Assembly (NCBI GenBank): GCA_030390025.1
Contig: CM059453.1
Coordinates: 6,014,001 to 6,078,000, forward strand
DNA from: Squalus acanthias
Taxonomy: Eukaryota
Direction of reading: 5' to 3'
DNA length: 64,000 nucleotides
Part shown: piece after piece, positions 211 to 63,256 of the stretch
How positions within the stretch are numbered: position 1 is the first letter of the stretch
Layout: every line of letters starts with the position of its first letter
Made by a program: the position numbers and the translations under genes
Notes under the pieces: model-generated
What the model was told of the DNA's origin: nothing
What the model saw: only the letters and a program-made list of their open reading frames with translations
Databases searched by the model: none

Positions 211-468
211 ATGGACTGGAAATCCCAACCGTCAACTCCTCTATAGTAGCTGTGGAAGGAAGTTCATTATTATTATACTGCACGGCCTGGTGGAAACCTC
301 CGTTCAGTTTAAGATGGGTGAACAATGGTGAAGAGATCAGCAGGTCTGCCACTGGTGAACTAAAGCATATATTGCACAACATTAGTTCCAAGGATGACGG
401 TGTATATTGGTGCGTAGCTGAAAATGCCCTGCGCACCGCAAACCGCTCCACTCTGATGTCTGTACAAT
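211..468 (+). CDS. Gene A (inhibitory Siglec-like receptor, 5' part outside window): second C2-set Ig exon
   Basis: tttcag acceptor and T|gtaagt donor, 258 bp, phase 1-1. Reads DGLEIP..LLLYCTAWW..LRWVNNG..DDGVYWCVAEN, with Ig C...W...DxGxYxC. Paralogs at 29049 and 60892. Confidence 0.92.
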
Positions 469-1430
469 GTAAGTATGTATTAATTTATCAATTCGACAGT
501 AGACTTTCAATTCTCGAACACTGGATTAAATTCCAGTTTTCTCTTACCTGCTTGATTGAAGGCGCCGATATCAATGAGTTTGGGATAGTGTCAGCCCTTC
601 CTGCGGAAATAGCGCAAAACAACCTCGATGGCTCCAATAATGGAAACTGACTTTGCCATCTCGCCAAGGTTGCGACAGGAGCACGAATTTACTGAGACAT
701 TTACTCTAAATCTAATTGTTCATAAATAATATTGGTAGTCTGAGGCAAATAATTTTCCAATCCTTAGAACTGACATGCATGAAATTGATGAGTACAAATT
801 CTTCGAAAATTTTCCAGTACTTTGTGGTAACCCAACTACTGTTACTTGTGTTAATGTTGAGCTCAGAATGTAATATTCAGAGACTCGGTCCTTTGAAATG
901 TCGACATGTTAGTTGGTTATCTATAGAAAGAACACTTCAAAGTCCACTACTAGGGAAAATGTTTAAAAGAGTGCACCGCTTGAAGAAATTTAATTTGATT
1001 GATCTTTTAAAATACAGACTTCTGAGACACGTGTCTGGATATAGTATACATAATTAACACTCTGAGCTTCCTCCGTCCGAGGAACCCCCAGAATATCTGT
1101 CAGGAAAATTATGATTGGACTGAGCACTCATTCTATTCAATACGAAGTTGTACCAAACGGCCTAATCTGCTATACATGAAAATGTCTGCTGCCTGGCCTG
1201 CTGAGTTTTTCCAGCGTTTTCTGTTGTTATTTCGGATTTCCAGCATCCGCAGTATTTTGCTATCGTATACATGAAAATGTAATAAGCCATCAATTAGTGC
1301 AAAATAATTGTTACATATAAAATAAAACATGCCAGAGCCATTATGGTTAGTTCAACAACTGACATCATTGTATTTGGCCACTTCAACTGTTTGATATATT
1401 CTTTTCATACTGAAGTCTCTCTTTCTTTAG

Positions 1431-1718
1431 ATAAAGCCACAATTTTAGCAGGCCCGACATGCACCAGCTCTGAAAATTGGACGAATTGTACCTGCCGGAT
1501 CAGAGCCAATCCACCGGGCAACATCACATGGGGCCTCAATGGGAGTATTATAACTGGGAACAGGTCAGATGTGGAAGTCATCTCCTGGGTGGGGAATAAT
1601 CACCACATGGAGAGCTCCCTGAGACTAACTCATCCAACTGGAACCGGAAACCTGATCTCATGTGTTGCAGCAAACGAGCACGGTGATTCTGTCAGCAAAT
1701 ACCAGCTCCACCCTAAGG
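1431..1718 (+). CDS. Gene A: membrane-proximal C2-set Ig exon (MAG domain 5 / Siglec-like)
   Basis: ctttag acceptor and G|gtacat donor, 288 bp. Reads YKATILAGPTC..NCTCRIRANPPGNITW..LISCVAANEHG. The extra CxC motif is typical of the last domain of MAG and CD33-related Siglecs. Confidence 0.92.
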
Positions 1719-2536: not shown

Positions 2537-2630
2537 GAATATTCTCCAGGACAAACGTCCTCATAATAGGAGGAGGAGCCACTGGGCTTGTTATTCTAAT
2601 TGCTTTCGCGGTCACGCTCAAGATGCAAAG
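2537..2630 (+). CDS. Gene A: transmembrane exon (A-type, no charged residue in the core)
   Basis: ttttag acceptor and AG|gtatgt donor, 94 bp, phase 1-2. Reads GIFSRTNVLIIGGGATGLVILIAFAVTLKMQR. Near-identical exon at 63163. Confidence 0.88.
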
Positions 2631-4116: not shown

Positions 4117-4204
4117 GCAGAAGCACGGGGAAGCTGCACGTGTCTCCGAAGCACACGATGATTTGGTGATTTACAGTACGGTGCAGAAGGCACTAAACGC
4201 TGAG
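4117..4204 (+). CDS. Gene A: cytoplasmic exon with ITIM (VIYSTV)
   Basis: atttag acceptor and GAG|gtaagt donor, 88 bp, phase 2-0, in phase with the TM exon. Reads (R)QKHGEAARVSEAHDDLVIYSTVQKALNAE. Confidence 0.88.
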
Positions 4205-5927: not shown

Positions 5928-6095
5928 AGGGACAATCAGTATGCAGAGGCTGGTCGGAGAGCCGCACAATCGACTAAACCAGCTCAGAATGACGAGATTG
6001 TGTACGCGACCGTCAATGTCTCAAACTTCCGCAAACATGATCAATATATTCAAAATGAGGAGAACTGCGAATATGCAGCAATTAAACAGAACTAA
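5928..6095 (+). CDS. Gene A: terminal exon 1 with ITIM (IVYATV) and distal ITSM-like motif (CEYAAI)
   Basis: ccttccgttacag acceptor, phase 0. Reads RDNQYAEAGRRAAQSTKPAQNDEIVYATVNVSNFRKHDQYIQNEENCEYAAIKQN*, a proximal ITIM plus distal motif like CD33-related Siglec tails. Confidence 0.88.
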   Translation, partial: RDNQYAEAGRRAAQSTKPAQNDEIVYATVNVSNFRKHDQYIQNEENCEYAAIKQN

Positions 6096-12135: not shown

Positions 12136-12147
12136 CTTCCGTTGCAG

Positions 12148-12321
12148 AGGGGATATTGTGAGAATGATCCACACAGTGATGTTGGAGAAGTGATATCCAA
12201 CTCGGCGGAGCAGAACGAAGCCATTAATTACGCCACTCTGCACTTTTCAACTCTTACTCAAGGGCACGGATATGTACATTGTAAAGAAATAGGTGACTAT
12301 GCAGTTATGAAATTCAACTGA
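12148..12321 (+). CDS. Second, paralogous terminal exon with ITIM (INYATL) and distal Tyr motif (GDYAVM); candidate alternative tail of gene A
   Basis: Acceptor ccttccgttgcag|AGG is nearly identical to that of 5928 (ccttccgttacag|AGG), phase 0. Reads RGYCENDPHSDVGEVISNSAEQNEAINYATLHFSTLTQGHGYVHCKEIGDYAVMKFN* and aligns to terminal exon 1. Confidence 0.75.
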   Translation, partial: RGYCENDPHSDVGEVISNSAEQNEAINYATLHFSTLTQGHGYVHCKEIGDYAVMKFN

Positions 12322-22425: not shown

Positions 22426-22427
22426 GA

Positions 22428-24929: not shown

Positions 24930-24972
24930 ATGAGGGGTTGCTTGTTTGCTTTTCTCATGATATTAACAGATG
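24930..24972 (+). CDS. Gene B: signal-peptide exon
   Basis: MRGCLFAFLMILTD, then G|gtaaat. The 43-bp length is conserved in genes C, D and E. Confidence 0.85.
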
Positions 24973-45090: not shown

Positions 45091-48000
45091 CCAGGAAGCT
45101 GAATAAGTGTGAAATGTGAGTCAGAGGCGTCTGCAAGCGTGGGCGGTGATCTTCTGACGCAGATTCCAACATATTATGTTCAAAAATAACAGGGTATTTA
45201 TTGTAAGTGTGTTTATGTGAGAGAGAGAGAGATGCTGCTTCTATAGTATGCATTGTTTAGCAACTGTTCGACATACCATACCATCATATTCAGTAACAGT
45301 CGGTTAGACGCAGTCGATTAACAGGATGTGGTAGTTGCCCACCTCTCCAACGAAGCTGAGTGAGTAAGCACTGTTCCTACAGTTCGGTTGATACAGACTA
45401 GCGGACTTTTCCCGATAATCTGACGAAGATTAGCAAATAAATCCAAGATATGGCAGGCATGAAGAATGCAGAAACCTGAATGGGCTCGATTGTGGAATTG
45501 ATTCTTCATTTTGAGAGTGACATCTACAACAGGTTCCAGTCATGAGGGGTTGCTTGTTTGCTTTTCTCATGATATTAACAGATGGTAAATTTATATTGTT
45601 TTTAATAATTTTGGAAAAGTTGATTTATATCTTTTGGGTAAGGAACTGGAAAATACCGAATATAAATGATTTTTGGTGATTGATTTTAAAACTGGTGAAT
45701 TAGGAATTTCATGATTGTTCAACACACCCCTTGTTGGTGTATTATTGTGTTTGATTACCTATTCAATTAATATTTAAATATATGATGTTTCCGTAATATT
45801 TATTAATATTATAATGCACATTTAAGAACATTTTAATTCATATTTATTCAAAATGCAAGGGGAGAATCAATAGATTTTATATATATATATAGATGAATAA
45901 TTCAATATTTATTTAATGTGTTTTTATTGGGCATTGGCTTGTTTGTTAACGGGTATGTATTTGGTTTTTAGATGAGTATTAAATATGTATATTATTGTTC
46001 ATAAATCTCCTACCAAATAGGTATTCCAATAAACATTTTAATACATGTTGTGATTGGTATTGAATGAGTATTTTAAATGATTTTGAAAAGGCCTTAACTG
46101 ATACTTAAATTGTGATGGGCGCTTTTTTTATTCACCATGGGATGTGCGTGTCGCTGGCGAGGCCAGCCTTTATTGCCCATCCCTAATTGCCCTTGACAAG
46201 GCGGTGGTGAGCTGCCTTCTTGGACCGCTGCAGTCCTTGTGGTGAAGGTACAACCATACTGCATGTTTGTCAATTAACACGTACTTTAATGGAACGTTAA
46301 GATGCTGCAAAGCATTTTAAATAGAATCTGACATGGGTTCTCATGTTCCTTTCTCTCAGTTGCTTGTAGTGCTCAATGCTCTGTGGTGATGCCAAATGTT
46401 GTGTCGGCAGTTTTGGGTTCATGTGTAGAGATCCCGTGTACATTTGATAATCTCGTCTATTACACCAACCCAAGCGGGACGTGGATAAAGTTGGGCCCTG
46501 GTCCTGGAAACCGCGGTTTCTCCATTATCTATGATTCTGAACATCCACACAGGAAGCATTATAACTATAGTGGAAGAGCTGAGTTTAAGGGCAACATTGC
46601 AGCTGAACAATGTTCCCTCCTGATAAAGGACATCAGGAAGAGTGATGAGGGTACATATCAACTCAACTTGAAATCCCTTTGAGCATCTATACTAAAAACC
46701 ATCGCACTGACGATGCTCAAGTCTCTCTTTCTATTTCGGGTGAGTTTTCCCTTGGTTCCTTTCAGTACATTTTCACTCCAGTGCTTCAGTCTGATTCAAC
46801 CTATGTGCAAAGTGGGCACATTTTATAAAGTCGCTGGCCGATCTCAAAGGGTAGTTGAAACAGAGGGTGCAGGGATACTGATAATGGACGCAGTGGTTCA
46901 TATCCTAAACACAGCAGTATCTAGACATTACAGCTGTAAAACAGGCCGTTCGGCCCTGTCCAACCGTGTGGCTGTTTATCCTTCACATGAGCCACACTCC
47001 GAATCGCATGTGTCTGCTCAGTTCCCACATCTCTGTATTGCAAATCCCTTCAATCACCTGTCGAACCTATTCTGAAATGTTCACATGAGGATGGAGGTGC
47101 AACTTTTTGATGGGACGTAAGACTGACGATGTTGATCTACACCTGAAATAGAAATCAGTTGCTCATTATTTCCAGACCCGGACGGCAAGTTCAAATTCTG
47201 CCTCAGTCTGGTTCTATCCCCGTTGTCCCGTTGCTTTATAAGTTTAAGCACTGCAGTTAAATCATCCCAAAATCTGTTGTAGCCTAATGAGGTCTGGCTC
47301 CAAATTTAAAGGCTTCCTTGGTGTTGCTCGTTCCTCATACCAGCCAGAAACCACGCGAATCTGCCATGTAGCGACCCCATAGACTTGAGTCCCAAACAGA
47401 CATTCTTATTCCATCTGTGAACTAACTGCGGTTCTCTTTAGAATCTTGACTTTTATATTTAACATCACTTGCCATTAAACGCAGGACTCCAATAACATTT
47501 TCATGCCCGTTTCCACTGTCGGTGCTGCTTCACATTCTTATGACCCTGGAGCCCCAAATTTCCCCTCTATTCCACATCACCCAGCTTTCCACCGTTCAAA
47601 CTACTATCTACCACCTCATATTCACTGACACTGAGTTGTATGTGCCTCATATTTCCCCATTCTGCTCTCTCTCTCTCCATGAACCCTTTGGAACTCCCTT
47701 TAGTACTCAGAGTTATTTACTGGGAGACGTAATTTGAAGTTTTGCTCGGGTGTCAAACTGGCGATATAGGATGAGTCTTTCATTTGACACCACCCCATAT
47801 TTCCTTTTCTATGTAATGCAATGGAAAGTAAAAACAGTCGGGTTTGTATAATAGGAGTACGATGAGATATTGCCAGTTTTACACCATTTTCATTTGTTAA
47901 CCTTAATCCCCTACTTCTGCTATTAATTACTGTCGGGACATTTGGACATCACTATCTCCAGCGCTATATACAAATAATCTATGTACAAAGTGAATAGAAG

Positions 48001-50537
48001 CATTTAATTAACTCAACCTTTTGGGACACCGTCCTCAGTTACCAACCATTTCTGAGCAACTGCACTTAACGGCGACTCACTATCATCCCTTCCAAACAGT
48101 TGTATTGCAATTTCTGCCTTATCCTTAATTCCAAACTTTTCCAATGATCTTCTGTATTTACCGTCGTTAATGTCTTGCTGGTTACATTTCTATTTACTTT
48201 TGTGTGAAGCGTTTTAGGACGTTCCGAAAACTTTAAACGCACTTAATAAATGCAGTCTTCTTTCTTGCCTTTCCCTATTCAGAGCTCAGTTACCCCGCTT
48301 TTAATTAGATCTGAACATTTTACAGTTATGCGAAAGTGAGTTAAAATTATGATATATTTGTTCATTCTGATCCCACGTCACCAACATGCTATTTCTCCTG
48401 AAGGTTTCATGAGATTTACACGCGAGGTATCTGCTGTGTTTCTCAAGCACAATCTATGTTACCTGTCGTTTTCAGTTCTGTCTATATTGACCTTTCTTTG
48501 CATCGTAATTTTGGCCTCTCTGTGTCTGCATTAGTCACAATCTCACTGGTAAGTGCTGGTGCAAAGATAGGCACATGAAAGAATCAAATATTTGTGATAC
48601 TTGTAGAGATAACCTTGATTTTAATTCCTGCGTGCAAAATTGATCTAAAGGTACCAGATCCATAATTTGAATAGTGTAGGTGATAAAGCGACTGATATTT
48701 AATTACCAGAAGTTATATATTGCCCGGTGAGGCATTAAACTACCTTTTAACTCCAAGGCGTAATTCAGAATAGCGAACTCACTTGCAACACTTAGCAGAC
48801 AAAAAATTACAAAATGCATTCCTTTTTAAAATTCTTTATCAGATTGAGTTGGAGCAGATAACTTGCCCGTTTTAAGATTGAAATGAAGCTAACGCGTGCG
48901 TTTTCTCCTGCTCTTATAGAAAAGCCAGAGATTTCAGGTTATGGGGAATTGATCGCTGGACAAACTGCACGAATGACCTGTTCCATCATCCACAACTGCC
49001 CGGAGGGCAACCTGCAACTGAAGTGGTTTAATTACAATGTGTCCCTGCCTCTTCCATGGTCTACTCAAGATGGAGCAGAAATAATCAATGAACGTTTTGG
49101 TTCTCGGAGAGTTTCATCCTTGATCACCTTCACTCCATCATCTGCTCATCACGGAACAGTTCTGGGATGCACAATTTTAATTGATGGTGTCCCAACTCCT
49201 TCTCCCCAAACTCGTACCTTGAATATTAAGTGTAAGTGTCTGTTCTAAAGTTAATAGATATAACCTACCGGACAACGGTTTTTAATATTTATACTCCATC
49301 ATAAACAATTTAATAAGGGTTTAGGACCGCATCAATTAATGTATTGAGAAAAGATGGACGTCTGTACTCTTGAGTTTTCAAATGGAAAATTAATGAATCG
49401 GCTTTCATTTCACGAACTCTGGATTAAATTCCAATTTTCTCTTGCCTGCTTGCTGGAAGGCGCACACGTGCACGAGGTTGGGATAGTGCCACCACTTCCT
49501 GCGGAAATACCGCAAAAAAACCTCGATGGCTCCAGTAATGGAAACTAACCTGGCCTCTAGTTCAGTATGACAGGATTGGAAGATATCAAAATGTGGCATA
49601 AATGCACCATGTTGTACATTTATGAGGTTGCTACAGGAGCACATTTACTGGGACCTTTACTCTACATCTAAATGTTCATAAATATTACTCGTAGTCTGAA
49701 GAAAACAATTTTCCAATTCTTGGAACGCCAATCGCACATTTTGATAAGCACAAATTCTCCTAACGGTATCTAATAAAATGGTGTTAAGCCAACTTCTGTT
49801 ACTTGTATTAATGTTGAGTTAGGTCCTTTGAACTGTCTCCTTGCATGCCGGACATTTATTGAAGAAGCAATTCAGTCCAACACAAACGATTATGTTTAAA
49901 ATAGTGCATAAAGTGAAGACATTAAATTAATTGACCTTTTATAACAGTGACGGGTGAATCACGTTTGTGGGTATATTGCTCCGTCTGAGGTTCCCCCACA
50001 ACATCTGTCAGGACAGGTATGGTTGGACTGAACACACATTGGGTTGAATATGAAGTTATTCCTTACGGCGCTCTCGTGTTACAAGTGAAGATATTGTTAG
50101 CCACCAACTGGTGCAACAAAGGTTGCTTCATATTAAAATAGAACCTACCAGAACTATTATGGTTATTTCAACAGATTACTTAATTGTACTTCGACACTGC
50201 AGCTGTTTTACATGATCATTTCCTATTTAAGTTTCCATCTTTTTAGATAAACCCACAATTTTAGCGGGCCCGAAATGCAGCAGCTCTGAGAATTGGGCGA
50301 ATTGTACCTGCCGGATTAGAGCCAATCCACCGGGAAACATCACATGGAGCTTCAATGGGACAATCCTCACTGGGAACACGTCACATGTGGAAGTAATCTC
50401 TTGGGCGGTGAATAGTCATATCATGGAGAGCTCCCTGAGATTGACTCACCCAACCGGAACCGGAAACCTGATCTCATGTGTTGCAGCAAACGAGCACGGT
50501 GATTCTGTCAGCAAATACCAGCTCCACTCTAAGGGTA

Positions 50538-50971
50538 TAGAAACATAGAAACATAGAATCTAGGAGCAGGAGTAGGCCATTCGGCCCGTCGAGCCTGCTC
50601 CGCCATTCAATACGATCATGGCTGATCATCCAAATCCAGTACCCTGTCCCTGCTTTGATCCCCACAGTACACATATCCCACCCTACCCCCGTAACCCCAC
50701 GTATTTAATTCCCCCTAACATATCCCATCCTATCCCCATAACCCCACATATTTAATCCCCCCTAACACTAAGGGTCAATTTATCATAGCCAAATCAACCT
50801 AACCCACACATTTTTGGACTGTGGGAGGAAACCGGAGCACCCGGAGGAAACCCACGCAGACACGGGGAGAATGTGCAAACTCCACACAGACAGTCACCCG
50901 AGGTCAGATTCGAACCCGGGTCTCTGGCGCTGTGAGGCACCAGTGCTAACCACTATGCCACCGTGTTGCCC
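50538..50971 (-). mobile_element. tRNA-derived V-SINE (HE1-like) with HER1-LINE 3' tail
   Basis: Minus strand: ggcaacacggtggcatagtggttagcact (A box), gggttcgaatct (B box), V-domain gtggagtttgcacattctccccgtg, then the LINE tail and (tttctatg)n. Absent from the gene B paralog. Confidence 0.88.
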
Positions 50972-51879
50972 ATATGTTTAATCTATCTGTAATTGAATAC
51001 TATAAGGGAATTGTTCGAATACTGGTCAGTCACTAAGTGAAAGGTGATAGTGTCAGAAAGTAACGGTTCCATTCAGCATGTCCATACTGAATCTATCTAT
51101 AATTAGTGCAAGGACCACTTTCCATCAGTGGCCCGTTACCAACTGAACCATGTTATGCATTTCAACTTTGAGTCTTCTGAAATATGCTGCCTTTTTATTT
51201 TCCAAGATGAAATGAAATTATCTGAGCACTAGAAGTAGCATGAGCGCTTGAAAAATAGCCTTTTCTGCATTAAGATAAACACTTTAGAAAATCCGAATTC
51301 TGTTCACTCGTCCCCGGATTCTTGTCCTGGTCCACACGACTGCCTACTTCACACAAGTGTAGTTCACAGTGGGGTAAGTGCACATAACAGGCACAAGTAA
51401 TGAATGACGACGGTGTTTTTTCCCCCCAGAATTTCCAAAACAGCGGTTGGAGGAAGCAAGAAGTGTCCAATCCCCGTAGTTCCCCATATAACAATAAAAA
51501 GGTTGATGTCGACCGGTTGCACTGTTTGCTCTCCGGTCCTGCCCTTTCAGTTTGTTCTACCGCTGCAGCACCTTCCCCCACCCAACGGACCAGGAATTTT
51601 AGGCCCTATATTATCCGGTTACAGAACTGTTTTTTATTTAACACATGTTCATGATTTCTGTCTATCAACTGCAGTGTTGTAATATCGATGTCTAATATGG
51701 AGCATGTTTTCTCACGTTTAGATAAATTGTCCTGGATACATATCGCCCTGAGTGGATCAACAAATCTCCTTTATATCATGCTGACTATAGCCTTCATTGC
51801 GGAGCAGATGCGGATGTACAGGTGGTTTTATAATTCGATAGACGGGTAGTTTGGGGAAGTCTCATTCAAAACGAACTTA

Positions 51880-52176
51880 AGTGAGAAGTCGCACAACACC
51901 AGGTTATAGTCCAACAGTTTTATTTGAAATCACAAGCTTTCGGAGCTGCTGCTCCTTCGTCACGTGAAGTGAAGGATTACAAATCGGCAACGCATTTATA
52001 GACAGAACTCTGTCTCTGTCTATATATGCTTTGCCGAATTGTATTCCTTCCCTGCACCTGACGGAGGAGCAGCAGCTCCGAAAGCTTGAGATTTCAAATA
52101 AAACTTTTGAACTATAACCTGGTGTTGTGCGACTTCTCACTTATGTCCACCCCAGTCCAACACCGGCATCTCCGCA
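51880..52176. mobile_element. Palindromic Penelope-like (inverted pLTR) non-autonomous insertion with 14-bp TSD
   Basis: Inverted arms span 51878-52143. TCAAAACGAACTTA is repeated at 51866-51879 and 52177-52190. The site is empty in gene B (about 31398-31412). Confidence 0.75.
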
Positions 52177-55100
52177 TCAAAACGAACTTAGACATAAGGA
52201 AATCTTATAAATACGAATCTTGATTGACACAAATCACCGCCTCAGAGCAGGGAATGTTCGGGCTGAGCTGGGAGGTATGGAGGAGAGAGTGAGGTGGGAG
52301 GTAGATCCTGCCGCACAGAAACGCCATTTCACATTGGCGCCTGTATAGTTTGGATGATGGGATGGAATATTAAATTTGACTCTTATCCTCGAAAATAAAT
52401 TATAGCTTCATGAAAATGTAAACGCGCCCTCTCCTGGTGGGGATATATTGGTATTGGGCATAAAATATCATCTTACCTCAAATCTGAAATTACATTTTTT
52501 AATTCTGCTTAATTCTAAACTCGTATCATGGGATGCATCATCTGAAGAACCGATGAAATTAAAGCGATATTTTGAAATGTAGGCGGGCAATCAGCGAAAA
52601 CCAAATGAACTGTCTCAGGCTAAATAGGAAGCGTGTGTTTATAAAATGTGCCAATGTCCTTCATATGAACCTGAACACTTTCAGTAAAACCAATCTAGTG
52701 GGAAATTCCTCTCGTGGCCCTTACTTGATCATATTCTAAATGTGGTCAGTAAGTTAACCATGCAGAATGAATCTTCAAAAATATGTTTCTGATGTAGACA
52801 TGTACTCATCTTTTCTTTCCTATTATTAACTGTTTGGATTTATTATATATACATATATATTTCAAATCATTTTTCAGGAAGAAATCAGCAGAGGCGAAGG
52901 TATCTCCAGAACAGATCAAAGACTCAGCGCCCAAAAGTGTCATATGGAGACCTTTGAAGGCCCAGTTGACTGCGGCGAGGTTAACTGTTTCAGTCCGGTG
53001 GTTAGCGATAGAAAACCGGTAAATTCCGGAAATATTCAGCAGGTCAGGCAGCATGTCTGCAGAGAGAAACAGAGTTAACGTTTCAAGTCGCTGAACATTC
53101 ATCAGAACAGATGTTGGGCAGTGAGTCTGTTTGAGTGGTAAATATTGTTATAGTGATGGTTACATATTCGAGTTTTCTTAGATTGTAAATCACCAATCAC
53201 GTTAGGTCCAATTGTTAATCAAAATATCAAAGATAGCCAGTATCTAATAAGGTACGAACTACATTGGGGGCTGGATGTAAACTGTAGGGGCAATAGTGCA
53301 AGTAGATTTCCCCTCAGTAGTTTCCGCACCAGAAAGATGAGAACCAGAGTCAATGTTCATAAAATATAAACGGATCTACATACAGCGACCACTGATTCAA
53401 CCTTCGTGACTGTATATCAACGCAAATTTTGCAACTAACTCAGAAGAAATATACGAAGTCTGAGCGAATAATGAAAGCACATCAGCTTAGATTCCGCTTT
53501 GCATTGAGTTCAGACCTGGTTTATCTCCACTCCTACTTTTTATGTTACAGAGAGACGATGGACATGCAGAAGTGCAACTGTAGTTTATTCTCAAGATGGA
53601 AACCAGTTAAGATGAAAGGATTATGTACACAACTGGAAGATTCTCAATACTGCGAATAATGATAGGTATATCCACCACGAGGACACCTGAATATGGAACA
53701 ATTATATCTAACTGAAAACAAATTTCCAAGTATGCTGGAAATCTGAAAAAGAAACTGGGAACGCTCAGCAGGTCATGCAGCTTCTGTGAAGAGAAAAGCA
53801 GAGTTTAGGTTTCAGGTCGATGGACTTTCGTCAGAACGATTAATATATAGACGGTTAGGGCAGCGGTGTTGCTTTCACTCCGTTCCCTTCGAACGCTGTA
53901 GAGATGCCTCTGAGAATGGACATATTTCAGGGTACATTTAATAACTTCACTGCTGTATGTTGGACGATTTAATTTACAATCACAAACGTTTATCCCCCTG
54001 TATTTCCATTAGTTTTCAAAATGCTGACAGAATGGAACTTAATTTTTGAGACAAATTGGAATTTTGTTTTCAAGTGCAACGCATTGCGACAGGTACATAT
54101 CTATGTGTAATTACTGCGGGAATTCACAAGGGGTCAGGGCACGGCCTAAGTCCTCCAAATTTAGCAAGGACTAACTTCCTTTAGGCATTTTCAATATTGT
54201 GAATTTTTTTGCAACATCGGGACACAGTTTGTAAAAGGCTGGACTGAGTGCGAGTGAGCAGAATAGAGACGATTGCAAACACCCTACAGAAAGTATATCT
54301 CGTCACTTTTCGAAAACCTCACTGAAAAAGGTTATAGCTTTAAAGGCGCTGAGGGGAGTGATGGAAAGCAACCTGAGAAAATGGTGGATATTTCTTTATA
54401 TTTTACAATTTTGCAATAAACTGTTGAATAAAACATTTTTGAAATCTCTTACTTTTTCACACACAGCATTGGCGTCCAGCCTCACAATAGCACAGCCTAT
54501 TGCAACAGTATGATATGTTTATTGCTGTTAAAATCTTAGATTCAGTGAATAATGATAGTTTCAGCAAGCAATACTCTGAAGCATGTGACCTGGTTCCAGT
54601 AGTTTATTAGGTCACATTGTAGTGGAAGTCGGGCGTTCTCACGGTGACTAAAGGAGACATGTCATTGGTACTTTCTTTAGTTCGGATGCATTCTTTTAAT
54701 TGCAGCACGGGCTTACAGCCTTGGGTTAAAATTAATGCTCTCCTTTCTGAGTTATTAGACAAACTGAATCCTGATCTTTCATGTTGCCCTCATACAGGTG
54801 GCGATGATAACAACTTGAGTTTTTTTTCCTCTTTAGATTTTCAGAAGGTATTATTTGATTTCAAATTAAAGAACATGATTGGGGTTCAGCAAGGGGAGGT
54901 AAATGAGCCAAAGGTGTTGTCCTGACAAAAAAATGCAGTTATCATTTAATGCACTCCTTGACTGGTGAATTGCTTTACTGTTAATCATCTTCTGCCTTCC
55001 CTTTCACCTGAAGCTAATGGAGAATAAAATTGGGCGGGGTCTAAAAGCGAATGCCGATTTGCTATCGACAGATTTACATTACCGCCCAAGAGCAATTTCA

Positions 55101-56198: not shown

Positions 56199-59100
56199 AT
56201 GAGGAGTTGTGTGTTCCTTTCGCTCATGATGCTGACAGAAGGTACATTTCTGATGTTTTTTTTACAATTTCTACAACAATTGATTTATATCTTGTGGGAA
56301 AGGAAAAGGAAAATACCGAATTGAATGATTTTTTGTTATTAATTTCAAAACTTGTGAAATAGGAATTTCATGATTGATTAACGCGTGCGTTGTTGTTGTT
56401 TTATAGCTTTTTAAAGCCTATTCAAATAATCTTTAAATATAGGGCTTTTCGAATTATATTTAATCAGTATTGTAATTCAGATATAAGAACATTTCCTTCA
56501 TATTTATCCTGTGATGCAAAGGAGAATCAATAGATGTTTAGATATTTTAATGCATATTTAATGCGCATTTGTATTGGGTGTTCGCTTACTTGTTAATGGA
56601 TATGTATTCGTTTTTTAGATGAGTATTAAATATGTATATTACCGGGTCATAAACATCCCATCAAATAAGCATTACTATGATTATTTCAATAGGTGTTGTG
56701 ATTGGAATTTATTTAGTATTTTTTCTTGATTTTGAAAAGACCTTCACTTATATTTAAATTGCTAGTGTGATGGGCGATTATTTGTCAATTAAAAAATACA
56801 TTAACGGATGTTTCAGATATTGAAATGTATTTTGAATTAAAGTGTGTCTAATTTATTTTTCTCAGTTGTTTGCAGTGCTCAATGCGCTGTGTTGATGCCA
56901 AAAGATGTGTCGGCGGTGGTCGGTTCATGTGCAGAGATCCGTGTACGTGTACGTTTGATTATACAGTCAATCGGAGAATCGCTGGTGTGACCTGCTTAAA
57001 GAGGGAACCTGGTTCTGGTAACCGGGGTTTCTCCATTGTCTATGATTCTGGAAATCCATCCAAGCAGCATTACAACTATCGTGGAAGAGTTGAGTTGAAG
57101 GGCAACATTGAAAACAAACAATATTCCTTCCTGCTAAAGGATATCAGGGAGAGTGATGAGGGTACATACGAAAGCAGCATCGAGTTCGCTCCGGGCTCGT
57201 CTATGAATAGACGTCGCACTCAGTGTACTCACGTATTTCTTTCTGTTTTAGGTGAGTTTTCCCTTTGTTCCTTTTGAACATGTTCAATCCAGTACTTCAG
57301 TATGAATCAACCTATGTGCAAAGAGTGCAAATATCTTCATGTCCCTGGCCGATCTCAAAGGGTATTTGAAACAGAGGTGCACGGTTGCTGATAAGGGACG
57401 CAGTGGTTCATATACTGAACACAGAAGTAAATATAAATTACAGCAGTAAAACAGGCCCTTCGGCCCAGCCAGTTCGTGTTGCTGGTCGTCCTTCACATGA
57501 GCAACACTTCTAACTCCTCTGTCCCGTTGCTTAATAAGTTTAAGCACTTCTGTCAAATCATCCCAAAATCTGTTTAACCTAATAAAATCTGCAAACATTT
57601 TTAAATACTTTCCTCGTTTTTGTACTTCCTCATACCAGCCAGAACCTAGGCGAATAAGCCCTGTAGTCTTCCTATGGACTGGAGCCCAATACTCGCATTC
57701 TTACTCCAATTATGAACTAACTATTGTTCTCTTTAGAATCTCCACCACATCTCGAATTCCTTTTATAGATCTCTTGCCATTAAACCCTGAGCTCCAGAAA
57801 CATCTTCATACACTTTCCCACCGGAGGTGCTGCTTTTACTGTCTTATGAACCTGATCCCAAGTTCCTCTGCTCTTACACATCTCCCAGCTCCTACGGTTC
57901 AAATTAACATCTACCTCCTCATATTTTCCGATCTTTACTTATATCTGCCTCTTATGTATCCATTGTACTATATCTCCAGTATCCGTTTGCAACTCCCTTT
58001 AGTTCTCTAGTTATTTCCTGGGAGTTGCACTTGTAACTTTGGCATGGGTGTCAAACTTGAGATATTGGATGTGCCTCTCAATATACACCCCGCCCAATTT
58101 TCATATTGATACAATCCAATTAATTTATGCCAGGAAAATTTGAACATCACTCTCTTTAGCTTCTTCTCCAAATTATTGATTCACACAGTGAGTAGGAGCA
58201 ATCCCACAGCACAACCCTGTGGGACACCGTACTGGGATCCAACTATTCTGAGCAACTGCGCTTAACGGCGACTCACTGCTTCATCCCTTCTAAACAGTTT
58301 GTATTGCAATGTCTCCCTTATCCTTAATTCCAATCTTCTTGATATTATCTCCAATTATCTCCTGTACTTACCGTCGGCAATGGCTTGCAGTTTACATTTC
58401 AAATTACTTTTGTGTGAAGCATTTTTGGAAGTCACGAAGACTGGAAAGGCACTTAATGAATGCAGTCTTTTTTCGTGCATTTCCCTATTCAGAACTCATT
58501 TACCCCGCTTTCAATTAGATCTGAATTGAAAAGTAAATTTTACAGTTATGCGAAAGTGAGTTCTAATTAAGATTTATTTGTAGACTCTGATCCCACGTCA
58601 ACAGCATGCTGTTTCTGCTGAAGGATTCATGAGATTTACATGCGAGATATCTGCTTTGTTTCTCCAGCACAAGTCTATGTTACCTGGCATATTCTGATCA
58701 GTCCATTTCTTGAGCATAATCTTTCTATATTGACTTTTCTTTGCAACATATCCTTTGGATCTCTCTGTGTCTACAATAGTCACAATCTCACTGGCAAGTG
58801 CTGGTGCATTGCAAGGCCTATGAGAGGATCAAATACGAGTGATAAGAACATAAGAAAATAAGAGCATAATAAATAGGAACAGGAGTAGGCCATTCGGCTC
58901 TCGAGCCTGCCCCGCCATTCATTAAGATCATGGCTGATTTGATCTTGGCCTCAACGCCAGTTTGCCGCCCGCTCCCCATAACCCTTTACTCCCCAGTAGC
59001 TCAAACATATATCTATCTCCGCCTCGAATATATTCAATGACTCCGCCTCCAAACCTCGCTGGGGCAGAGAATTCCAAAGATTCACGACCTCTGAGAGAAG

Positions 59101-62100
59101 AAATTCCTCCTCATCTCCGTTTTCAATGGGTGACCCCTTATCATTAATCTGTTTCCCGTAGTTATAAGTTACCCACGAAATGAGACATTCTCCCTGTCCC
59201 TAACATGTGAATCTCCCTCAAAATCTTCTATGTTTCAATAAGATCACCTCTCATTCTTGTAAACTCCAATGTGTATAAGCCCAACCTGCTCAACCTTTCT
59301 TCATAAGATATCTCCTTCATCTCCGGTGTTAATCTAGTGAACCTTCTCTGAACAGCGTCCAAAGCAAGAATATCCCTCCTTAAATAAGGAGTCAAAAAAA
59401 CTGCATGCAGTACTCCAGATGTGGTATCACCAGCGCCCTGCACAGTTGCAGCCATACTTCCCTACTTTTATTCTCCATCCCCCTTGTAATAAAGGCCAAC
59501 ATTCCAGTTGCCTTCTTAATTACATGCTGTAACTGCATGCTAACATTTTGTGTTTCATGCACGAGGACCCACAGATCCCTCTGTACCGCAGCATTATGTA
59601 GTCTCTTTCGATTTACATAATAATTTGCTTTTTTTTTCCTACCAAAGTGGAAAACCTCACATATTTGAAGAATTAACGCTGATTCTAATTCCTGCGTGAA
59701 AAAGCAGGTCTGCAGGTATCAGGTCCATTAGGTTAAATAATGGTGGCCATATGTTGCCCATAAGGAAACAAGCTACTTTATAATTCCAAGGAATAATTCA
59801 GAATAGGGAACACACTTGCAACACATAGCAAACCAAAAAAAACAAAAATTATTTATTTTTAAATTCTTTATCAGTTTGAGTTGGAGCAGATAACTTGCAC
59901 GTTTTAACTTTGAAGTGAAACTAACACACGCGTTTGCTCCTGCTCTTATAGAAAAGCCAGAGCTTTCAGGTTATGGCCAACTGATCGCTGGACAACCTGC
60001 GCGACTGACCTGTTCCGTCATCCACAACTGCCCGTATGGCAACCTGCAACTGAAGTGGATTAATTACAATGTGTCCCTTCCTCTTCCATGGGACACTCAA
60101 CATCGAGCAGGAATTATCAATGAGCGTTTAGTTTCTCGGAGAGTTTCATCCGTGCTCACCTTCACTCCATCATCTGTTCATGACGGAACAGCTCTCGGAT
60201 GCACAATTTTAATTGATGGTATCCCAACTGCTTCTCCACAAACTCGTACCTTGAAGATTAAATGTAAGTGTCTGCACTGAAGTTAATAGATATAACCTAT
60301 CGGCCAACGGCTTTGATTATTTGTACTTTCATCACAAACAAGTTAAGAAGGGTTTAGGACCGCATCAAATTATGTATTGAGCAAAGATGGGCGTCTGTAC
60401 TCTCAGTGTACACCTGGAAAATTAATGAATCGGAATGGTGCTCAAACCAATCCTCATAGCAATACTATTTTAGGAGGATTCAGACCTATAAATCAATCCT
60501 GGGGGCTGGCAGAGTTTGGTTTATGTGATTTTTAATTCGCATTCTAATGACTTCCAGTGACGTTCTGAGTTTAATCAGTCATAAATGCATTAATAAAGGA
60601 CATGGCCAGAAATCTAAAGCTGATCGCTGCTATGATACTAGATCGGATATCTGGTTGGGCTTCAGAATTGGTCTGAATGACGTACCAGTGTTAACGTACA
60701 TAAGCCACCAAACGGAAAAAAGGGGAAGGGTGGGGTACGTTTTCGAGGAAATATATGTTCTTTTATAACTTTAAATTGAGGGACAGTAAAATTTAGAAGT
60801 TTTCAATTCATAACGACCCAAAATCAATATTTCATTTGGAGCGAAATCATGCTGACTGAATATTCACGATTTGCATTAATGCCTGTTTCAGATGGACTGG
60901 ACATACCAATCGTAAATTCCTCTATAGTAGCTGTGGAAGGAAGCTCATTGTTATTATACTGCACGGCTTGGGGGAAACCCCTGGTCAGTTTAAGATGGCT
61001 GAAAAATGGTCAAGAGATCAACAGATCTTCCAACGGTGAACTAAAGCAGATATTCCATAACATTAGTTCTGAGGATGACGGTGAATATTGGTGCATAGCT
61101 GAAAATGCCCTGGGCACCACTAACCGCTCCACACAGATTTCAGTACAATGTAAGTATGTATAAATTTATCAATGAGACAGTAAGCTTTCATTTCACGAAC
61201 TTTGTATTAAATTCCAATTTTCTCCCTCCTGCTTGCTGAAGGCGCCCATGTGCACGAGTTTGGGATAGTGCCAACACTTCCTGCGGAAATAACGCAAAAG
61301 CACCTCGATGGCTCCAATGATGGAAACTTACCTGGCCTCTAGCTCGGTATGACAGGATTGGAAGATGTTACAATGTGGCATAAATGCATCATGTTGTACA
61401 TTAATGAGTTTGCGACAGGAGCAGATTTACTGGGACCTTTGCTCTACATCTAAGTGTTCATAAATATTAATCTTAGTCTGAAGAAAGCAATTTTCCAATT
61501 CTTAGAACGCCAATCGCACATTTTGATAAGCAGAAATTCTCCCAACATTATCTAATAAAATGGTGTTAAGCCAACTTCTATTACTTGTATTAATGTTGAG
61601 TTAGGTCCTTTGAACTGTCGCCTTGTAAGCCAGACATTTATTGAAGAAACACTTCAGTCCAACACAAAAGAAAATGTTTAAAATAGTGCATAACGTGAAG
61701 ACATTGAAATTAATTTACCTTTTAAATCAGTGACGGGTGAATCACGTTTGTGGGTATATTATACATAATTAAAATTCTGAGCTTGCTCCGTCTGAGGTAC
61801 CCCCACAACATCTGTCAGGACAGGTATGGTTGGACTGTACACTCATTGGGTTCAATATGAAATTATTCCTTACGGCGCTCACGTGTTACAAGTGAAAATA
61901 TAGCAAGCCACCAACTGGTGCAACAAAGGCTGCCTCATATTAAAATAGAACCTACCAGAACTATTATGGTTAGTTCAACACATGACTTAATTGTACTTCG
62001 ACAATGCAGCTGCTTTACATGATCATTTCCTCTTGCTGTTTCCATCTTTTTAGATAAACCCACAATTTTAGCAGGCCCGACATGCAGCAGCTCTGAGAAT

Positions 62101-63256
62101 TGGGCGAACTGTAGCTGCCGGATCAGAGCCAATCCACCGGGAAACATCACGTGGTGCCTCAATGAGAGCATCCTCACTGGGAACAGGTCGGATGTGGAAG
62201 TCATCTCCTGGGCGGTGAATAGTCACCTCGTGGAGAGCTCCCTGAGATTGACTCACCCAACCGGAACAGGAAACCTGATCTCTTGTGTTGCAGCAAACGA
62301 ACACGGTTATTCTGTCAGCAAATACCAGCTCCACTCTAAGGGTACGTGTTTACTCTATCTGTAATGTAATACTATAAGGGAGTTGGTGCATCACTGGTCA
62401 GTCATTAAGTGAACGGTGTTAGTGTCAGCAAATTTCAGCTTCATTCAGCAGGTCCATACTGAATCTCTCTCGAATTAGTGTAAGGACCACTTTCAATCAG
62501 TGCTCAATCACGAACTGAAAATGAGGTTGGCATTATCCATTTTAACTATAAGTCTTCTGAAACATTTTCGGTTTATATTTTCAAGATAACATGGAAATAT
62601 CTGAGCACCAGAAGAAGCCAGTGAGCTTGGAAAACAAATTCTTCTGAATTACATAAAACCTTTCGAAAATCCTAATTAATCACACAACATATTAGTAAAA
62701 TGCAATCTACCCTTTGGTATATACATGCTCATTTCTATCTTGTTCAGACGCATTTGAATCTATCAAGCCGATATTTAAAATCGAAGCGAAATCGAATTAT
62801 CTCTCTAGATTACAAATTTTACCGCTGCAACTGGTGACCTTGGCGGGCCTGCATTCTGATTGGATTATGTCCGCTGTTTTTCCGAGGGTTGGTTGTCTTT
62901 TGAACTTCATTTGTCACTTGTGATTTTTAAATCAGCGATTCGTAAATTATTTATTTCGAATATACACCAGGCCGCAACAGAGGAATTAAATGCTTTTACA
63001 CAAGGATCATCAGGTTGAAACAAGCGTAGTACCTAATTTTCCACTTGCTTTTTGATCCGAAAATAAAGAAAACTTGCTTCCCAACACTCACAAATGTGCT
63101 TCCAAGATTGTTATTTAAACACAATTACCTAATGTGCAGCAATGATTTTATCAACATTTTAGGAATATTCTCCAGGACAATCGTCCTCATAATCGGAGGA
63201 GGAGCCTCTGGGCTTGTTATTCTAATTGCAGTCGCGGTAACGCTGATGATACAAAG
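56199..63256 (+). pseudogene. Gene E: A-type (inhibitory-like) paralog with frameshifted V; exons 56199-56241, 56866-57251, 59952-60263, 60892-61149, 62054-62341, 63163-63256; tail expected beyond the window
   Basis: V exon is 386 bp (+5: GTGTAC duplication plus a 1-bp loss near 56940), giving an early TGA, and the C-strand Trp is now Cys. The C2 and TM exons are open with canonical sites. The 3' intron is collinear with gene A. Confidence 0.8.
58845..59660 (-). mobile_element. CR1/HER1-type LINE 3' fragment in gene E intron
   Basis: Minus ORF 59228-59455 reads VQRRFTRL..LGLYTLEF..RGDLIET, with tail aagaacataagaa. Confidence 0.88.

What the first reader, a model, noticed from the sequence alone, without database searches (positions are those of the whole stretch)
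211..63256. Paired inhibitory / ITIM-less Siglec-like receptor cluster in a probable cartilaginous fish
Seen: paralogs share near-identical C2 exons but carry two different signalling ends. The A-type (genes A and E) has an uncharged GGGxxG TM, and in gene A the tail holds VIYSTV, IVYATV and CEYAAI. The B-type (genes B and D) has a His/Glu TM and a short Tyr-free tail. The order is A-type, B-type, (A-type fragment), B-type, A-type. Known: this matches the logic of mammalian paired Siglecs (Siglec-5/14, 11/16), KIRs and LILRs. Inference: an independently evolved paired immune receptor system, which I do not recognise as described.
Basis: partly seen in the sequence, partly recalled or inferred. 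Interest (0 to 1): 0.9.

Follow-up and report, generated by a model that had tools for sequence, protein, structure and literature searches.

The report
Shark Siglec-like receptor gene cluster
This stretch of a shark genome holds a tandem cluster of immune-type receptor genes related to myelin-associated glycoprotein and the Siglecs, in which genes with inhibitory tails sit beside sister genes that lost those tails and carry a different, conserved membrane anchor.

Summary
The cluster is a roughly 21-kb tandem duplication, and the N gap lies in intergenic repeats away from any exon.

- **Family:** these are Siglec-fold genes, closest to MAG and sialoadhesin. All four V exons in the window lack the sialic-acid arginine. 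They belong to a 15-row arginine-less clade made up of elasmobranch proteins and the two window V exons.
- **A-type end:** an uncharged GGG membrane span with two ITIMs and a distal Tyr motif. Shark protein models in public databases use the same exon chain.
- **B-type end:** a homologous but strongly diverged membrane exon. The first ITIM tyrosine is lost and a stop falls ten codons into the last exon, with fossil ITIMs behind it.
- **Conservation:** one Heptranchias perlo model carries the same B-type end (69-72% identity). The C2c ectodomain exon groups by species, so the ectodomain is homogenised while the two ends stay old and distinct. This is paired-receptor logic.

Limits: the C2 exons are 87-94% identical, not near-identical. 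B-type and A-type V exons share only 59% of residues. Genes D and E carry frameshifts and C is a fragment. The B membrane span has no basic residue, so an activating role is unsupported. RNA support is one spliced contig. I found no paper on this, but NCBI already names such shark genes Siglec- or MAG-like.

The parts
211..468 (+). Gene A, C2b exon. The gene's 5' part lies before the window.
   Evidence: Open frame with AG acceptor and GTAAGT donor. Pfam Ig_2 E = 2e-10.
1431..1718 (+). Gene A, C2c exon
   Evidence: 81-85% protein identity to the C2c exons of B, D and E.
2537..2630 (+). Gene A, A-type membrane exon (GGG run, uncharged span)
   Evidence: 71% identical to the membrane segment of shark protein P0004.
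4117..4204 (+). Gene A, first tail exon with ITIM VIYSTV (motif at 4166)
   Evidence: The coordinates are the printed ones corrected by 3 bases. Matches the P0004 tail.
5928..6095 (+). Gene A, last coding exon with ITIM IVYATV (5997), distal CEYAAI (6066) and the stop
   Evidence: The two tyrosines align with the C-terminus of turtle MAG P0166 at the same spacing, E = 2e-4.
12136..12318 (+). Extra terminal-exon-like frame (INYATL, GDYAVM) 6 kb after gene A. It is either a relic or an alternative last exon.
   Evidence: tblastn E = 2.3e-5 to A's last exon. An aligned acceptor and stop are present.
17358..17610 (.). Assembly gap in intergenic LINE-rich DNA, at the 5' edge of the duplicated unit
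   Evidence: Its flanks are colinear with 38306-38461 and 38542-42071.
24930..24972 (+). Gene B, leader exon
   Evidence: ATG followed by a GTAAAT donor in phase 1. Resembles the N-termini of shark homologues.
25750..26130 (+). Gene B, V-set exon (Siglec Cys pattern; Ile where Siglecs have the essential Arg)
   Evidence: Pfam V-set 4.4e-13 and Ig_CD22 1.6e-8. Sialoadhesin 4.8e-12, with the Arg aligned to Ile. The donor is GTTAGT.
28123..28434 (+). Gene B, C2a exon
   Evidence: 62% identical to P0153 and 64% to P0004.
29049..29306 (+). Gene B, C2b exon
   Evidence: Pfam Ig_2 2.5e-13.
30212..30499 (+). Gene B, C2c exon
   Evidence: Groups with A, D and E in the C2c tree.
31253..31352 (+). Gene B, B-type membrane exon (His near the outer end, Glu just past the inner end, no Lys or Arg inside)
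   Evidence: Phase-1 acceptor found. The flanks align with the A-type exon. 71% identical to P0153 of Heptranchias perlo, E = 2.4e-14. Hydropathy.
32081..32168 (+). Gene B, first tail exon. The ITIM tyrosine of A is a Ser here.
   Evidence: One end of the GT..AG joint in a contig of run X1.
32754..32786 (+). Gene B, coding start of the last exon, ending in TAG at 32784-32786
   Evidence: Frame read across the joint. Joint 32168 to 32754 seen in X1.
32787..32917 (+). Gene B, fossil ITIM-like remains (IIYATG, PEYGTI) behind the stop and out of frame
35601..36652 (+). Unit C: the leader (35601-35643) and an intact V exon (36272-36652) of an A-type gene. No C2, membrane or tail exons follow before the next unit starts at 38306.
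   Evidence: Pfam V-set 7.4e-11.
45542..53583 (+). Gene D, B-type and probably a pseudogene. Exons: leader 45542-45584, V 46360-46739 (1 base missing), C2a 48920-49231, no C2b, C2c 50247-50534, a 437-base insert right after it, membrane exon 51722-51821, first tail exon 52878-52965 (donor TT), stop 53581-53583.
56199..63256 (+). Gene E, A-type membrane end. Exons: leader 56199-56241, V 56866-57251 (5 extra bases, frameshift), C2a 59952-60263, C2b 60892-61149, C2c 62054-62341, membrane exon 63163-63256. The tail lies beyond the window.

Best explanation
This is a birth-and-death tandem cluster of elasmobranch Siglec-fold receptors related to MAG (Siglec-4). They belong to an old branch that lacks the sialic-acid-binding arginine.

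A-type genes have an uncharged GGG membrane span and a tail with two ITIMs and a distal Tyr motif. They are inferred to be inhibitory receptors that recruit SH2 phosphatases.

B-type genes descend from such an inhibitory gene. Their membrane exon is the positional homologue of the A-type exon but has diverged strongly. The first ITIM tyrosine is gone, and a stop early in the last exon cuts off the remaining motifs.

The B-type end is old. It is shared with Heptranchias perlo. The ectodomain exons, in contrast, are kept alike within each species by gene conversion or repeated exchange.

The most likely role of B-type is a non-inhibitory counterpart, a decoy or counterbalance, that sees the same or similar ligands without delivering the ITIM signal. 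In this window only A (its 3' part) and B look intact. C is a 5' fragment, and D and E carry lesions.

What is shown: the exon anatomy, the homology, the conservation of the B-type end, the species-wise grouping of C2c, and one spliced tail contig. What is inferred: phosphatase recruitment, ligand sharing, the decoy role and expression of the whole chain.
For: **Cluster structure.** A tandem unit of about 21 kb, 82-93% identical across its matching segments.

**Siglec fold.**
- Pfam V-set and Ig_CD22 score above their cut-offs for the V exons of B and C.
- The best solved match of B's V exon is sialoadhesin at 4.8e-12. Both B-strand Cys and the E-strand Cys are conserved, and the essential Arg aligns to Ile.
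- Shark homologue P0004 matches MAG at 4.7e-52 over three domains.

**Old arginine-less branch.** The V tree has a 15-row clade with 97/95 support that holds the window's B and C plus sharks and the ray Narcine. 0 of its 15 rows has Arg. 7 of all 25 rows do.

**A-type chain.** The motifs are in place. The same membrane, tail-exon and last-exon order is seen in shark proteins P0004, P0001, P0003 and P0154. The spacing of the two tail tyrosines matches turtle MAG.

**B-type end derived from an ITIM ancestor.**
- The flanks of the membrane exons align between the two types.
- The first tail exons align, with Tyr changed to Ser.
- The last exons align, with a shared stop in B and D and fossil motifs behind it.

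**B-type end is conserved.**
- P0153 of H. perlo matches the B membrane exon at 71% over 31 residues (E = 2.4e-14) and the first tail exon at 68% over 22 residues.
- In the membrane-segment identity table, B-to-B pairs score 69-72%, A-to-A 39-84% and A-to-B 18-34%.

**Ectodomain is homogenised.**
- In the C2c tree the window's A, B, D and E form one clade (94/93), and the H. perlo ITIM and B-type proteins form another (98/98).
- An AU test rejects a clade of B-type C2c domains at p = 0.0009.
- In H. perlo, the B-type P0153 and the ITIM-type P0151 share 82 of 114 V residues, 93 of 104 C2a residues and 80 of 95 C2c residues, but only 16 of 50 in the membrane span and tail.

**Gene B is intact.** 8 exons, 500 codons, all splice sites canonical.

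**Expression hint.** A 218-base contig of run X1 joins 32168 to 32754 across a GT..AG intron.
Against: - The V exons of the intact B-type (B) and A-type (C) copies share only 59% of residues, and C2a only 73-80% between B or D and E. Shared ligands are therefore an assumption here. A's own V exon is outside the window.
- D and E are damaged and C is a fragment, so much of the cluster may be dead.
- B's V-exon donor is the uncommon GTTAGT.
- RNA support is thin. Three runs only guessed to be RNA gave one low-depth contig (3.3) on the tail exons and none on the Ig or membrane exons. That contig differs from B at 7 bases and 1 gap in its second piece, so it comes from an allele or a third B-type copy.
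- P0153 is a computed gene model and the only B-type protein found. It was 1 of the 32 tails printed, and it was the only hit of the region search.
- dN/dS is about 1 or higher for V and C2a, which fits relaxed selection as well as diversifying selection.
- I named the AU-test group after seeing the tree.
Confidence: 0.6

Rival explanations
1. B-type genes are true activating receptors. Their conserved membrane span, with His near the outer face and Glu at the inner face, binds an ITAM-bearing or other signalling adaptor, giving an inhibitory/activating pair like Siglec-5/14.
For: - The B tail is short and has no tyrosine.
- The membrane exon is conserved between two sharks, including the His and the Glu.
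- The membrane exon has diverged from the A-type more than its flanking intron has.
- The His sits about where FcRgamma-coupled receptors carry Arg. This placement is recalled, not tested.
Against: - There is no Lys or Arg inside the span.
- An ITIM-bearing relative, P0154, also has His at a similar place, and P0151 and P0001 have Lys or Arg there. Polar residues at that position therefore do not mark ITIM-less forms.
- Classical Arg-in-membrane, short-tail forms do exist in this family, but in the other V clade: P0120 of Mustelus and P0043 of Cetorhinus. No such exon was found in the window.
- No adaptor was examined.
Confidence: 0.2
2. The B-type lineage is simply decaying. These are ITIM receptors that lost their tail and are on the way to pseudogenes with no function of their own.
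For: - B and D share a premature stop and fossil motifs.
- D has three further lesions.
- dN/dS is 1.67 for C2a and 3.18 for the membrane exon between B and D.
- RNA evidence is scant.
Against: - B keeps 500 open codons and 14 canonical splice sites.
- The B-type membrane exon is 69-72% identical to that of a shark of another genus. That is as conserved as the A-type membrane exons between the same two sources (55-71%).
- H. perlo's B-type model ends even earlier, at a different stop, so a short tail is kept in two ways.
- A spliced B-type tail contig exists.
Confidence: 0.12
3. The repeated units are an assembly artefact, either collapsed or duplicated haplotypes around the N gap, and not real paralogues.
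For: An N gap sits exactly at the 5' edge of the repeated unit.
Against: - The units differ by 7-18% across their matching segments. They also differ by a 738-base deletion that removes an exon, a 437-base insertion and several indels. That is too much for haplotypes.
- Several sharks have many such genes on one contig. Five of the proteins listed come from one 15.7-Mb H. perlo contig.
Confidence: 0.03

Closest known systems
Myelin-associated glycoprotein (MAG, Siglec-4) and avian Schwann cell myelin protein
   Same: - MAG is the best solved-structure relative of the family. Shark homologue P0004 matches MAG 5lf5 at 4.7e-52, colinear over V and two C2 domains, and shares 27-35% identity with turtle MAG.
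- The last tail exon of gene A aligns with the turtle MAG C-terminus, with the same spacing of the two tyrosines.
- NCBI names many shark members MAG-like.
   Different: - Four Ig domains rather than five.
- Tandem multigene family rather than one conserved gene.
- The essential Arg is absent.
- A leukocyte-receptor style ITIM tail, and ITIM-less sister genes.
CD33-related Siglec pairs (Siglec-5/14, Siglec-11/16)
   Same: - Linked genes with related ectodomains and opposite kinds of membrane end.
- The ectodomain is homogenised within the species while the ends stay distinct.
- An ITIM plus a distal Tyr motif at the C-terminus. That CD33-related Siglecs have this layout is recalled, and partly seen in passages of PMC7226832 and PMC13358205.
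   Different: - The ITIM-less partner has no Lys or Arg in its membrane span.
- The V domains of the two types in this window are only 59% identical.
- No sialic-acid arginine.
- The origin is independent. The B-type end carries its own fossil ITIMs.
Sialoadhesin (Siglec-1) V-set domain
   Same: Best solved match of the B V exon (4.8e-12). The two neighbouring Cys and the E-strand Cys are conserved.
   Different: - The Arg of the sialic-acid site is Ile in B, Thr in C, Asn in D and Ser in E.
- Sialoadhesin has 17 Ig domains and no ITIM (recalled).
Arg-in-membrane, short-tail members of the same elasmobranch family (P0120 Mustelus asterias, P0043 Cetorhinus maximus)
   Same: - Same family. Their C2c and V domains lie in the trees.
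- ITIM-less.
- P0120 has the accession next to that of the ITIM-bearing P0008, and its C2c is the sister of P0008's at 100/99.
   Different: - They carry Arg inside the membrane span.
- They belong to the V clade that mostly keeps the essential Arg.
- The window has no such exon.
KIR, LILR, teleost NITR and LITR multigene families
   Same: Tandem Ig-superfamily clusters that mix ITIM-bearing and ITIM-less members and evolve by birth and death with many pseudogenes (recalled).
   Different: The Ig domain types and ancestry differ. Their ITIM-less members usually carry a basic membrane residue (recalled).

Membership tests
Siglec family (I-type lectins) | N-terminal V-set domain similar to Siglec V-sets | tested here: met
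   Pfam V-set 49.8 bits (cut-off 26) and Ig_CD22 35.4 bits (cut-off 27) for B; 42.7 and 29.3 bits for C. Sialoadhesin matches at 4.8e-12 and 2.7e-9.
Siglec family (I-type lectins) | Siglec cysteine pattern: two Cys five residues apart in the B-strand region, one Cys in strand E, and an extra Cys in the next domain. The structural role of these cysteines is recalled. | tested here: met
   Met in B and D: all three V-domain Cys align with sialoadhesin, and C2a has the extra Cys. Not met in C and E, where the E-strand Cys is Arg and Tyr.
Siglec family (I-type lectins) | Essential arginine on strand F that binds the sialic-acid carboxylate | tested here: not met
   It aligns to Ile in B, Thr in C, and Asn and Ser in D and E. 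0 of 15 rows of the window's V clade have Arg.
Siglec family (I-type lectins) | Binds sialylated glycans | not testable with these tools
   Needs glycan arrays.
CD33-related Siglecs | Cytoplasmic ITIM followed by a distal ITIM-like motif near the C-terminus | tested here: met
   In gene A, IVYATV at 5997 and CEYAAI at 6066, plus a membrane-proximal VIYSTV at 4166. That this defines the group is recalled.
CD33-related Siglecs | Groups with CD33-related Siglecs rather than with MAG, CD22, Siglec-1 or Siglec-15 in a tree | tested here: inconclusive
   Only similarity ranks are available. For P0004 they are MAG 4.7e-52, Siglec-8 5.6e-17, CD33 1.2e-14 and Siglec-5 2.4e-10, with CD22 not among the 60 shown. 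No tool gave tetrapod CD33-related sequences, so I built no such tree.
MAG (Siglec-4) orthologue | Single conserved gene with five Ig domains and the essential Arg | tested here: not met
   At least five tandem units in 64 kb, four Ig exons, and no Arg.
MAG (Siglec-4) orthologue | Ectodomain and C-terminal tail colinear with MAG | tested here: met
   for the ectodomain of homologue P0004. for gene A's last exon against turtle MAG, E = 2e-4.
Paired inhibitory/activating receptors | Closely linked genes | tested here: met
   B's stop at 32786 and C's start at 35601 are 2.8 kb apart, and D's stop and E's start 2.6 kb apart.
Paired inhibitory/activating receptors | Nearly identical ligand-binding domains | tested here: not met
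   In the window the V exons of B and C share 58.7% of residues, and C2a of B and E 72.8%. In H. perlo the values are closer, V 82 of 114 and C2a 93 of 104, but still not near-identical.
Paired inhibitory/activating receptors | One partner with ITIMs, the other with a short tail that lacks them | tested here: met
   for A. for B.
Paired inhibitory/activating receptors | Basic residue in the membrane span of the ITIM-less partner, and association with an ITAM adaptor | tested here: not met
   The best hydrophobic windows of B and D hold no Lys or Arg. Adaptor association cannot be tested with these tools.
Paired inhibitory/activating receptors | Ectodomain homogenised between partners by gene conversion | tested here: met
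   C2c groups by species. The AU test gives p = 0.0009 against grouping by type. Membrane segments group by type.

The most novel reading that the evidence does not exclude
The B-type membrane end is a third, so far unknown way of wiring an ITIM-less Siglec-like receptor in cartilaginous fish. It is conserved between at least two sharks, with a His near the outer face, a Glu at the inner face and no basic residue. It would pair with a partner other than the Asp-bearing adaptors used by Lys/Arg receptors. This would give elasmobranchs a three-way system of inhibitory, Arg-adaptor and B-type receptors on homogenised, sialic-acid-independent ectodomains.
Probability: 0.12. Interest if true: 0.75.

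Novelty: new member of a known kind. Interest (0 to 1): 0.5.

Why it matters
Paired receptors, with a shared ectodomain and opposite signalling ends kept alike by gene conversion, are best known from mammals. Here the same logic appears in a MAG-related, arginine-less Siglec family of sharks. That places this mode of evolution near the base of jawed vertebrates and gives an independent case to compare.

It also bears on the statement that fish genomes lack inhibitory CD33-related Siglecs (passages of PMC7226832). That paper's main text holds neither 'shark' nor 'cartilaginous'. Elasmobranchs have a large family of ITIM-tailed Siglec-fold receptors.

The long-standing loss of the sialic-acid arginine in a whole clade suggests ligands other than sialic acid. 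The conserved, uncharged B-type membrane span is a concrete target for adaptor and mutagenesis tests.

Tried and rejected
**Transcript evidence.** The one run search listed three runs of the same species label, guessed to be RNA, with about 0.01 of the words or fewer. Laying them on 27500-33499 gave one spliced tail contig, one 198-base contig at 33277-33475 and high-depth repeat pieces. It gave nothing on the Ig or membrane exons. The use of the B membrane exon in this species therefore stays unshown. 23 of 30 bins had no depth in X1, which fits RNA rather than genomic DNA.

**Protein searches.**
- Exon-by-exon blastp of the B membrane exon and first tail exon against the 150 best representatives found nothing at E <= 0.01.
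- A region search with the C-terminus of P0153 found only P0153 among 46 candidates.
- The third search, with P0154, found 11 shark proteins and no closer relative of the window. The window's own species seems absent from the protein collection.

**An Arg-type membrane exon in the window.** tblastn with the C-termini of P0120 and P0043 gave only C2c matches and chance hits. Rejected.

**Both membrane exons inside one gene (alternative splicing).** Each type was found only in its own genes, and the two exons are positional homologues. Rejected.

**Phylogeny against CD22, Siglec-1, Siglec-15 and CD33-related Siglecs.** Not done. I used similarity ranks against solved structures instead.

**Literature.** Seven searches listed no paper on shark Siglec clusters or shark paired receptors.
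- PMC8455134: one passage seen. It only lists Siglecs among gnathostome gene families and points to its Supplementary file 9, which I could not see and which may list such genes.
- PMC7226832 and PMC13358205: passages seen.
- A 2018 review of Siglec evolution in Developmental and Comparative Immunology is recalled only and is not in the library.

**Joined model.** All searches used single exons or natural database proteins.

Full report
**What is there**

The window has about 40% G+C and is full of LINE reverse-transcriptase fragments and SINE-like pieces. Self-comparison shows a tandem unit of about 21 kb: 17203-38306 matches 38306-58800 in segments of 82-93% identity. The window's first 3.4 kb match its last 3.3 kb at 86%.

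The only N run, 17358-17610, lies at the 5' edge of the first unit. Its flanks are colinear with 38306-38461 and 38542-42071 of the second unit, which has 80 bases between them. It sits in intergenic repeat DNA, 11 kb after gene A's stop and 7 kb before gene B's start, so no receptor exon or frame depends on it. Whether the two sides are truly continuous cannot be known. The A-to-B join and the number of units are the weakest points of the assembly. I filled in nothing.

**Gene models, exon by exon**

- **Gene B** has eight exons:
  - leader 24930-24972
  - V 25750-26130
  - C2a 28123-28434
  - C2b 29049-29306
  - C2c 30212-30499
  - membrane exon 31253-31352
  - first tail exon 32081-32168
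  - last exon from 32754, with TAG at 32784-32786

  All acceptors are AG and all donors GT. The V donor is the uncommon GTTAGT. The lengths add up to 1503 bases, which is 500 codons plus the stop, once two printed ends are corrected.
- **Gene A** enters the window in the intron before C2b. Its exons are C2b 211-468, C2c 1431-1718, membrane exon 2537-2630, tail exon 4117-4204 and last exon 5928-6095. VIYSTV, IVYATV and CEYAAI sit at 4166, 5997 and 6066.
- **Unit C** is only a leader and an intact V exon (35601-36652). The next unit starts at 38306.
- **Gene D** is B-type and damaged. One base is missing in its V exon. The C2b exon is deleted, since B's 28603-29341 has no counterpart. A 437-base insert lies four bases after C2c. 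The donor of its first tail exon is TT.
- **Gene E** has the A-type membrane exon (63163-63256) but a 5-base insertion in its V exon.
- C and E have lost the E-strand cysteine.

One script joined B's two tail exons to read the frame.

**The observation in numbers**

| Exon | DNA identity | Protein identity |
|---|---|---|
| C2 exons of the paralogues | 86.7-94.2% | 72.8-88.4% |
| V exons of B and C | 77.0% | 58.7% |

The C2 exons are similar, not near-identical.

The two signalling ends are real. The A and E membrane exons are 84% identical and the B and D exons 72%, while A-type against B-type is 19-28%.

The flanks of the four membrane exons align, including acceptor and donor. They are therefore the same exon, diverged in its core. 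In the best 23-residue hydrophobic window of B the His is the third residue and the Glu follows the last residue. Calling it a His/Glu membrane span overstates it: there is no charge in the middle and no Lys or Arg.

**B-type derives from an ITIM gene**

B's first tail exon aligns with A's, and the ITIM tyrosine is a Ser. The last exons align from a conserved acceptor. B and D share a stop ten codons in, and behind it, out of frame, lie IIYATG and PEYGTI where A has its ITIM and distal motif. This agrees with two earlier notes of the scan on this window.

**What family**

- Pfam places the V exons in V-set and in Ig_CD22, both above cut-off. C2b falls in Ig_2 and I-set. C2a and C2c score below cut-off.
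- Against solved structures, B's V exon is closest to sialoadhesin (4.8e-12), then sodium-channel beta-2, CD33, MAG, Siglec-5 and Siglec-8. In the alignment the two neighbouring Cys and the E-strand Cys are kept, and the essential Arg faces Ile.
- A search of 1.84 billion representatives with the same exon gave 386 proteins at E <= 0.001, the best at 58% identity.
- The named relatives are NCBI models from sharks and rays called Siglec 5, 8, 12, 13 or 14, MAG-like, Schwann cell myelin protein-like or sialoadhesin-like. 20 of 21 and 11 of 11 are sharks, and adds Narcine and Mobula.
- No hit exceeded 58% identity on B's V exon or 74% on its C2 exons, so this species seems not to be in the collection.
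- The nearest C2c relative is a Pristiophorus protein, then Heptranchias.
- The full-length homologue P0004 matches MAG at 4.7e-52 over V and two C2 domains, far ahead of Siglec-8 and CD33.
- Gene A's last exon aligns with the C-terminus of a turtle MAG, with the same spacing of the two tyrosines.

The family is MAG-related in both ectodomain and tail, but it is multi-copy, has four Ig domains and lacks the arginine.

In the V tree two elasmobranch clades are each supported at 97/95. The one holding the window's genes has 0 of 15 rows with Arg and includes the ray Narcine. The other mostly keeps Arg.

**Is the B-type end real elsewhere**

Of the 32 tails printed, one is B-type: P0153 of Heptranchias perlo. 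Its membrane segment is 71% identical to B's (E = 2.4e-14), and the next 22 residues are 68% identical to B's first tail exon. The model ends at the position of B's Trp, so its tail is even shorter and also lacks the ITIM tyrosine. A region search with that C-terminus found only P0153 itself.

**Old ends, young ectodomains**

In the C2c tree the window's A, B, D and E form one clade (94/93). H. perlo's ITIM proteins P0004 and P0151 and its B-type P0153 form another (98/98). Forcing the B-type C2c domains together costs 42 log-likelihood units, with AU p = 0.0009. I named that group after seeing the tree.

Membrane segments group the other way, by type. Within H. perlo, P0153 and P0151 share 82 of 114 V residues, 93 of 104 C2a residues and 80 of 95 C2c residues, but only 16 of 50 in the membrane span and tail. 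The simplest reading is that the two ends predate the split of these sharks and that ectodomain exons are exchanged between neighbours. That is the hallmark of paired receptors.

dN/dS between the window's paralogues is 1.18 for V, 0.76-1.67 for C2a, 0.32-0.60 for C2b and 0.24-0.57 for C2c. The outer two domains change fast and the inner two are constrained.

**Transcripts**

Only three runs were offered, all guessed to be RNA and kept as contigs. In X1 a 218-base contig lies on 32078-32165 and 32751-32879 and skips 585 bases with GT..AG ends. This confirms the splice between the two B-type tail exons.

The contig differs from B at 1 of 88 bases in the first piece and at 7 bases plus 1 gap of 129 in the second. 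Four of the five listed differences are D's state. D, however, differs from B at 11 places in the first piece and has a dead donor. The contig is therefore an allele of B or a third B-type copy. Its stop is kept.

A 198-base contig at 33277-33475 may be 3' untranslated sequence. No contig lay on the Ig or membrane exons. That is no proof of silence.

**How it most likely works**

A-type genes are inhibitory receptors whose phosphorylated ITIMs recruit SH2 phosphatases. This is inferred from the motifs and from established knowledge of ITIM receptors.

B-type genes present a related ectodomain without that signal. I take the decoy or counterbalance role as most likely (0.6 for the whole picture). 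A true adaptor-coupled activating role gets 0.2, for three reasons:
- The span has no basic residue.
- ITIM-bearing relatives also carry His, Lys or Arg at that spot.
- The family already has classical Arg-in-membrane forms in its other clade, P0120 beside P0008 in Mustelus and P0043 in Cetorhinus.

Plain decay gets 0.12 and an assembly artefact 0.03.

**Novelty**

I found no paper on this. Passages of PMC7226832 say fish genomes lack CD33-related Siglecs, and its main text holds neither 'shark' nor 'cartilaginous'. The whale shark paper only lists Siglecs among gene families. Its supplementary file, which I could not see, may list such genes.

The genes themselves are already in NCBI's automatic annotation of other sharks. 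Earlier notes of this scan report more such genes up to about 5.7 Mb from this window and on other pieces of this genome, including a predicted Arg-in-membrane form. I did not check those. I file it as a new member of a known kind, with a modest chance that the B-type span marks something new.

The look-up of encoding contigs and structure prediction were closed, so I have no H. perlo locus context and no structure model.

Noticed in passing
window 12136-12318 (+): A third copy of the terminal tail exon, with a conserved acceptor, an ITIM (INYATL), a distal GDYAVM and a stop. It lies 6 kb after gene A's own last exon and just after a tandem repeat at 11875-12134. It is either a relic of a lost gene copy or an alternative last exon of gene A.
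   Followed up: partly
window 1766-1828, 30567-30614, 62391-62459 (+): A short remnant resembling the 3' end of a C2c-type exon lies about 50-110 bases after the real C2c exon in A, B and E. In A and E it is interrupted by a stop. It looks like a fossil of a partial exon duplication.
   Followed up: no
window 50537-50974: A 437-base insertion in gene D starts four bases after the C2c exon. It encodes a frame similar to one at 33837-34082, so it is a dispersed repeat.
   Followed up: no
window 8640-9500 (-), 13071-15166 (+), 22433-22893 (+), 43095-43563 (+), 58851-59665 (-): Several fragments of LINE reverse-transcriptase genes, 68-80% alike. The longest open frame is 374 residues at 14042-15166.
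   Followed up: no
window 32264-32311 and 33010-33064: Two short stretches in the 3' region of gene B attract contigs at summed depths of hundreds to thousands in all three runs. The contigs run on into unlike sequence on both sides, so these are highly repeated, transcribed short elements.
   Followed up: no
window 33277-33475: A 198-base contig of run X1 lies colinear here, about 490 bases after gene B's stop, with 3 other letters and 1 gap. It may be part of a long 3' untranslated region of a B-type transcript.
   Followed up: no
proteins P0120 and P0008 (Mustelus asterias), P0043 (Cetorhinus maximus): The same elasmobranch family has members with Arg inside the membrane span and a short tail. 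In Mustelus such a gene has the accession next to an ITIM-bearing one, and the two share a near-identical C2c domain. This looks like a classical inhibitory/activating pair.
   Followed up: partly
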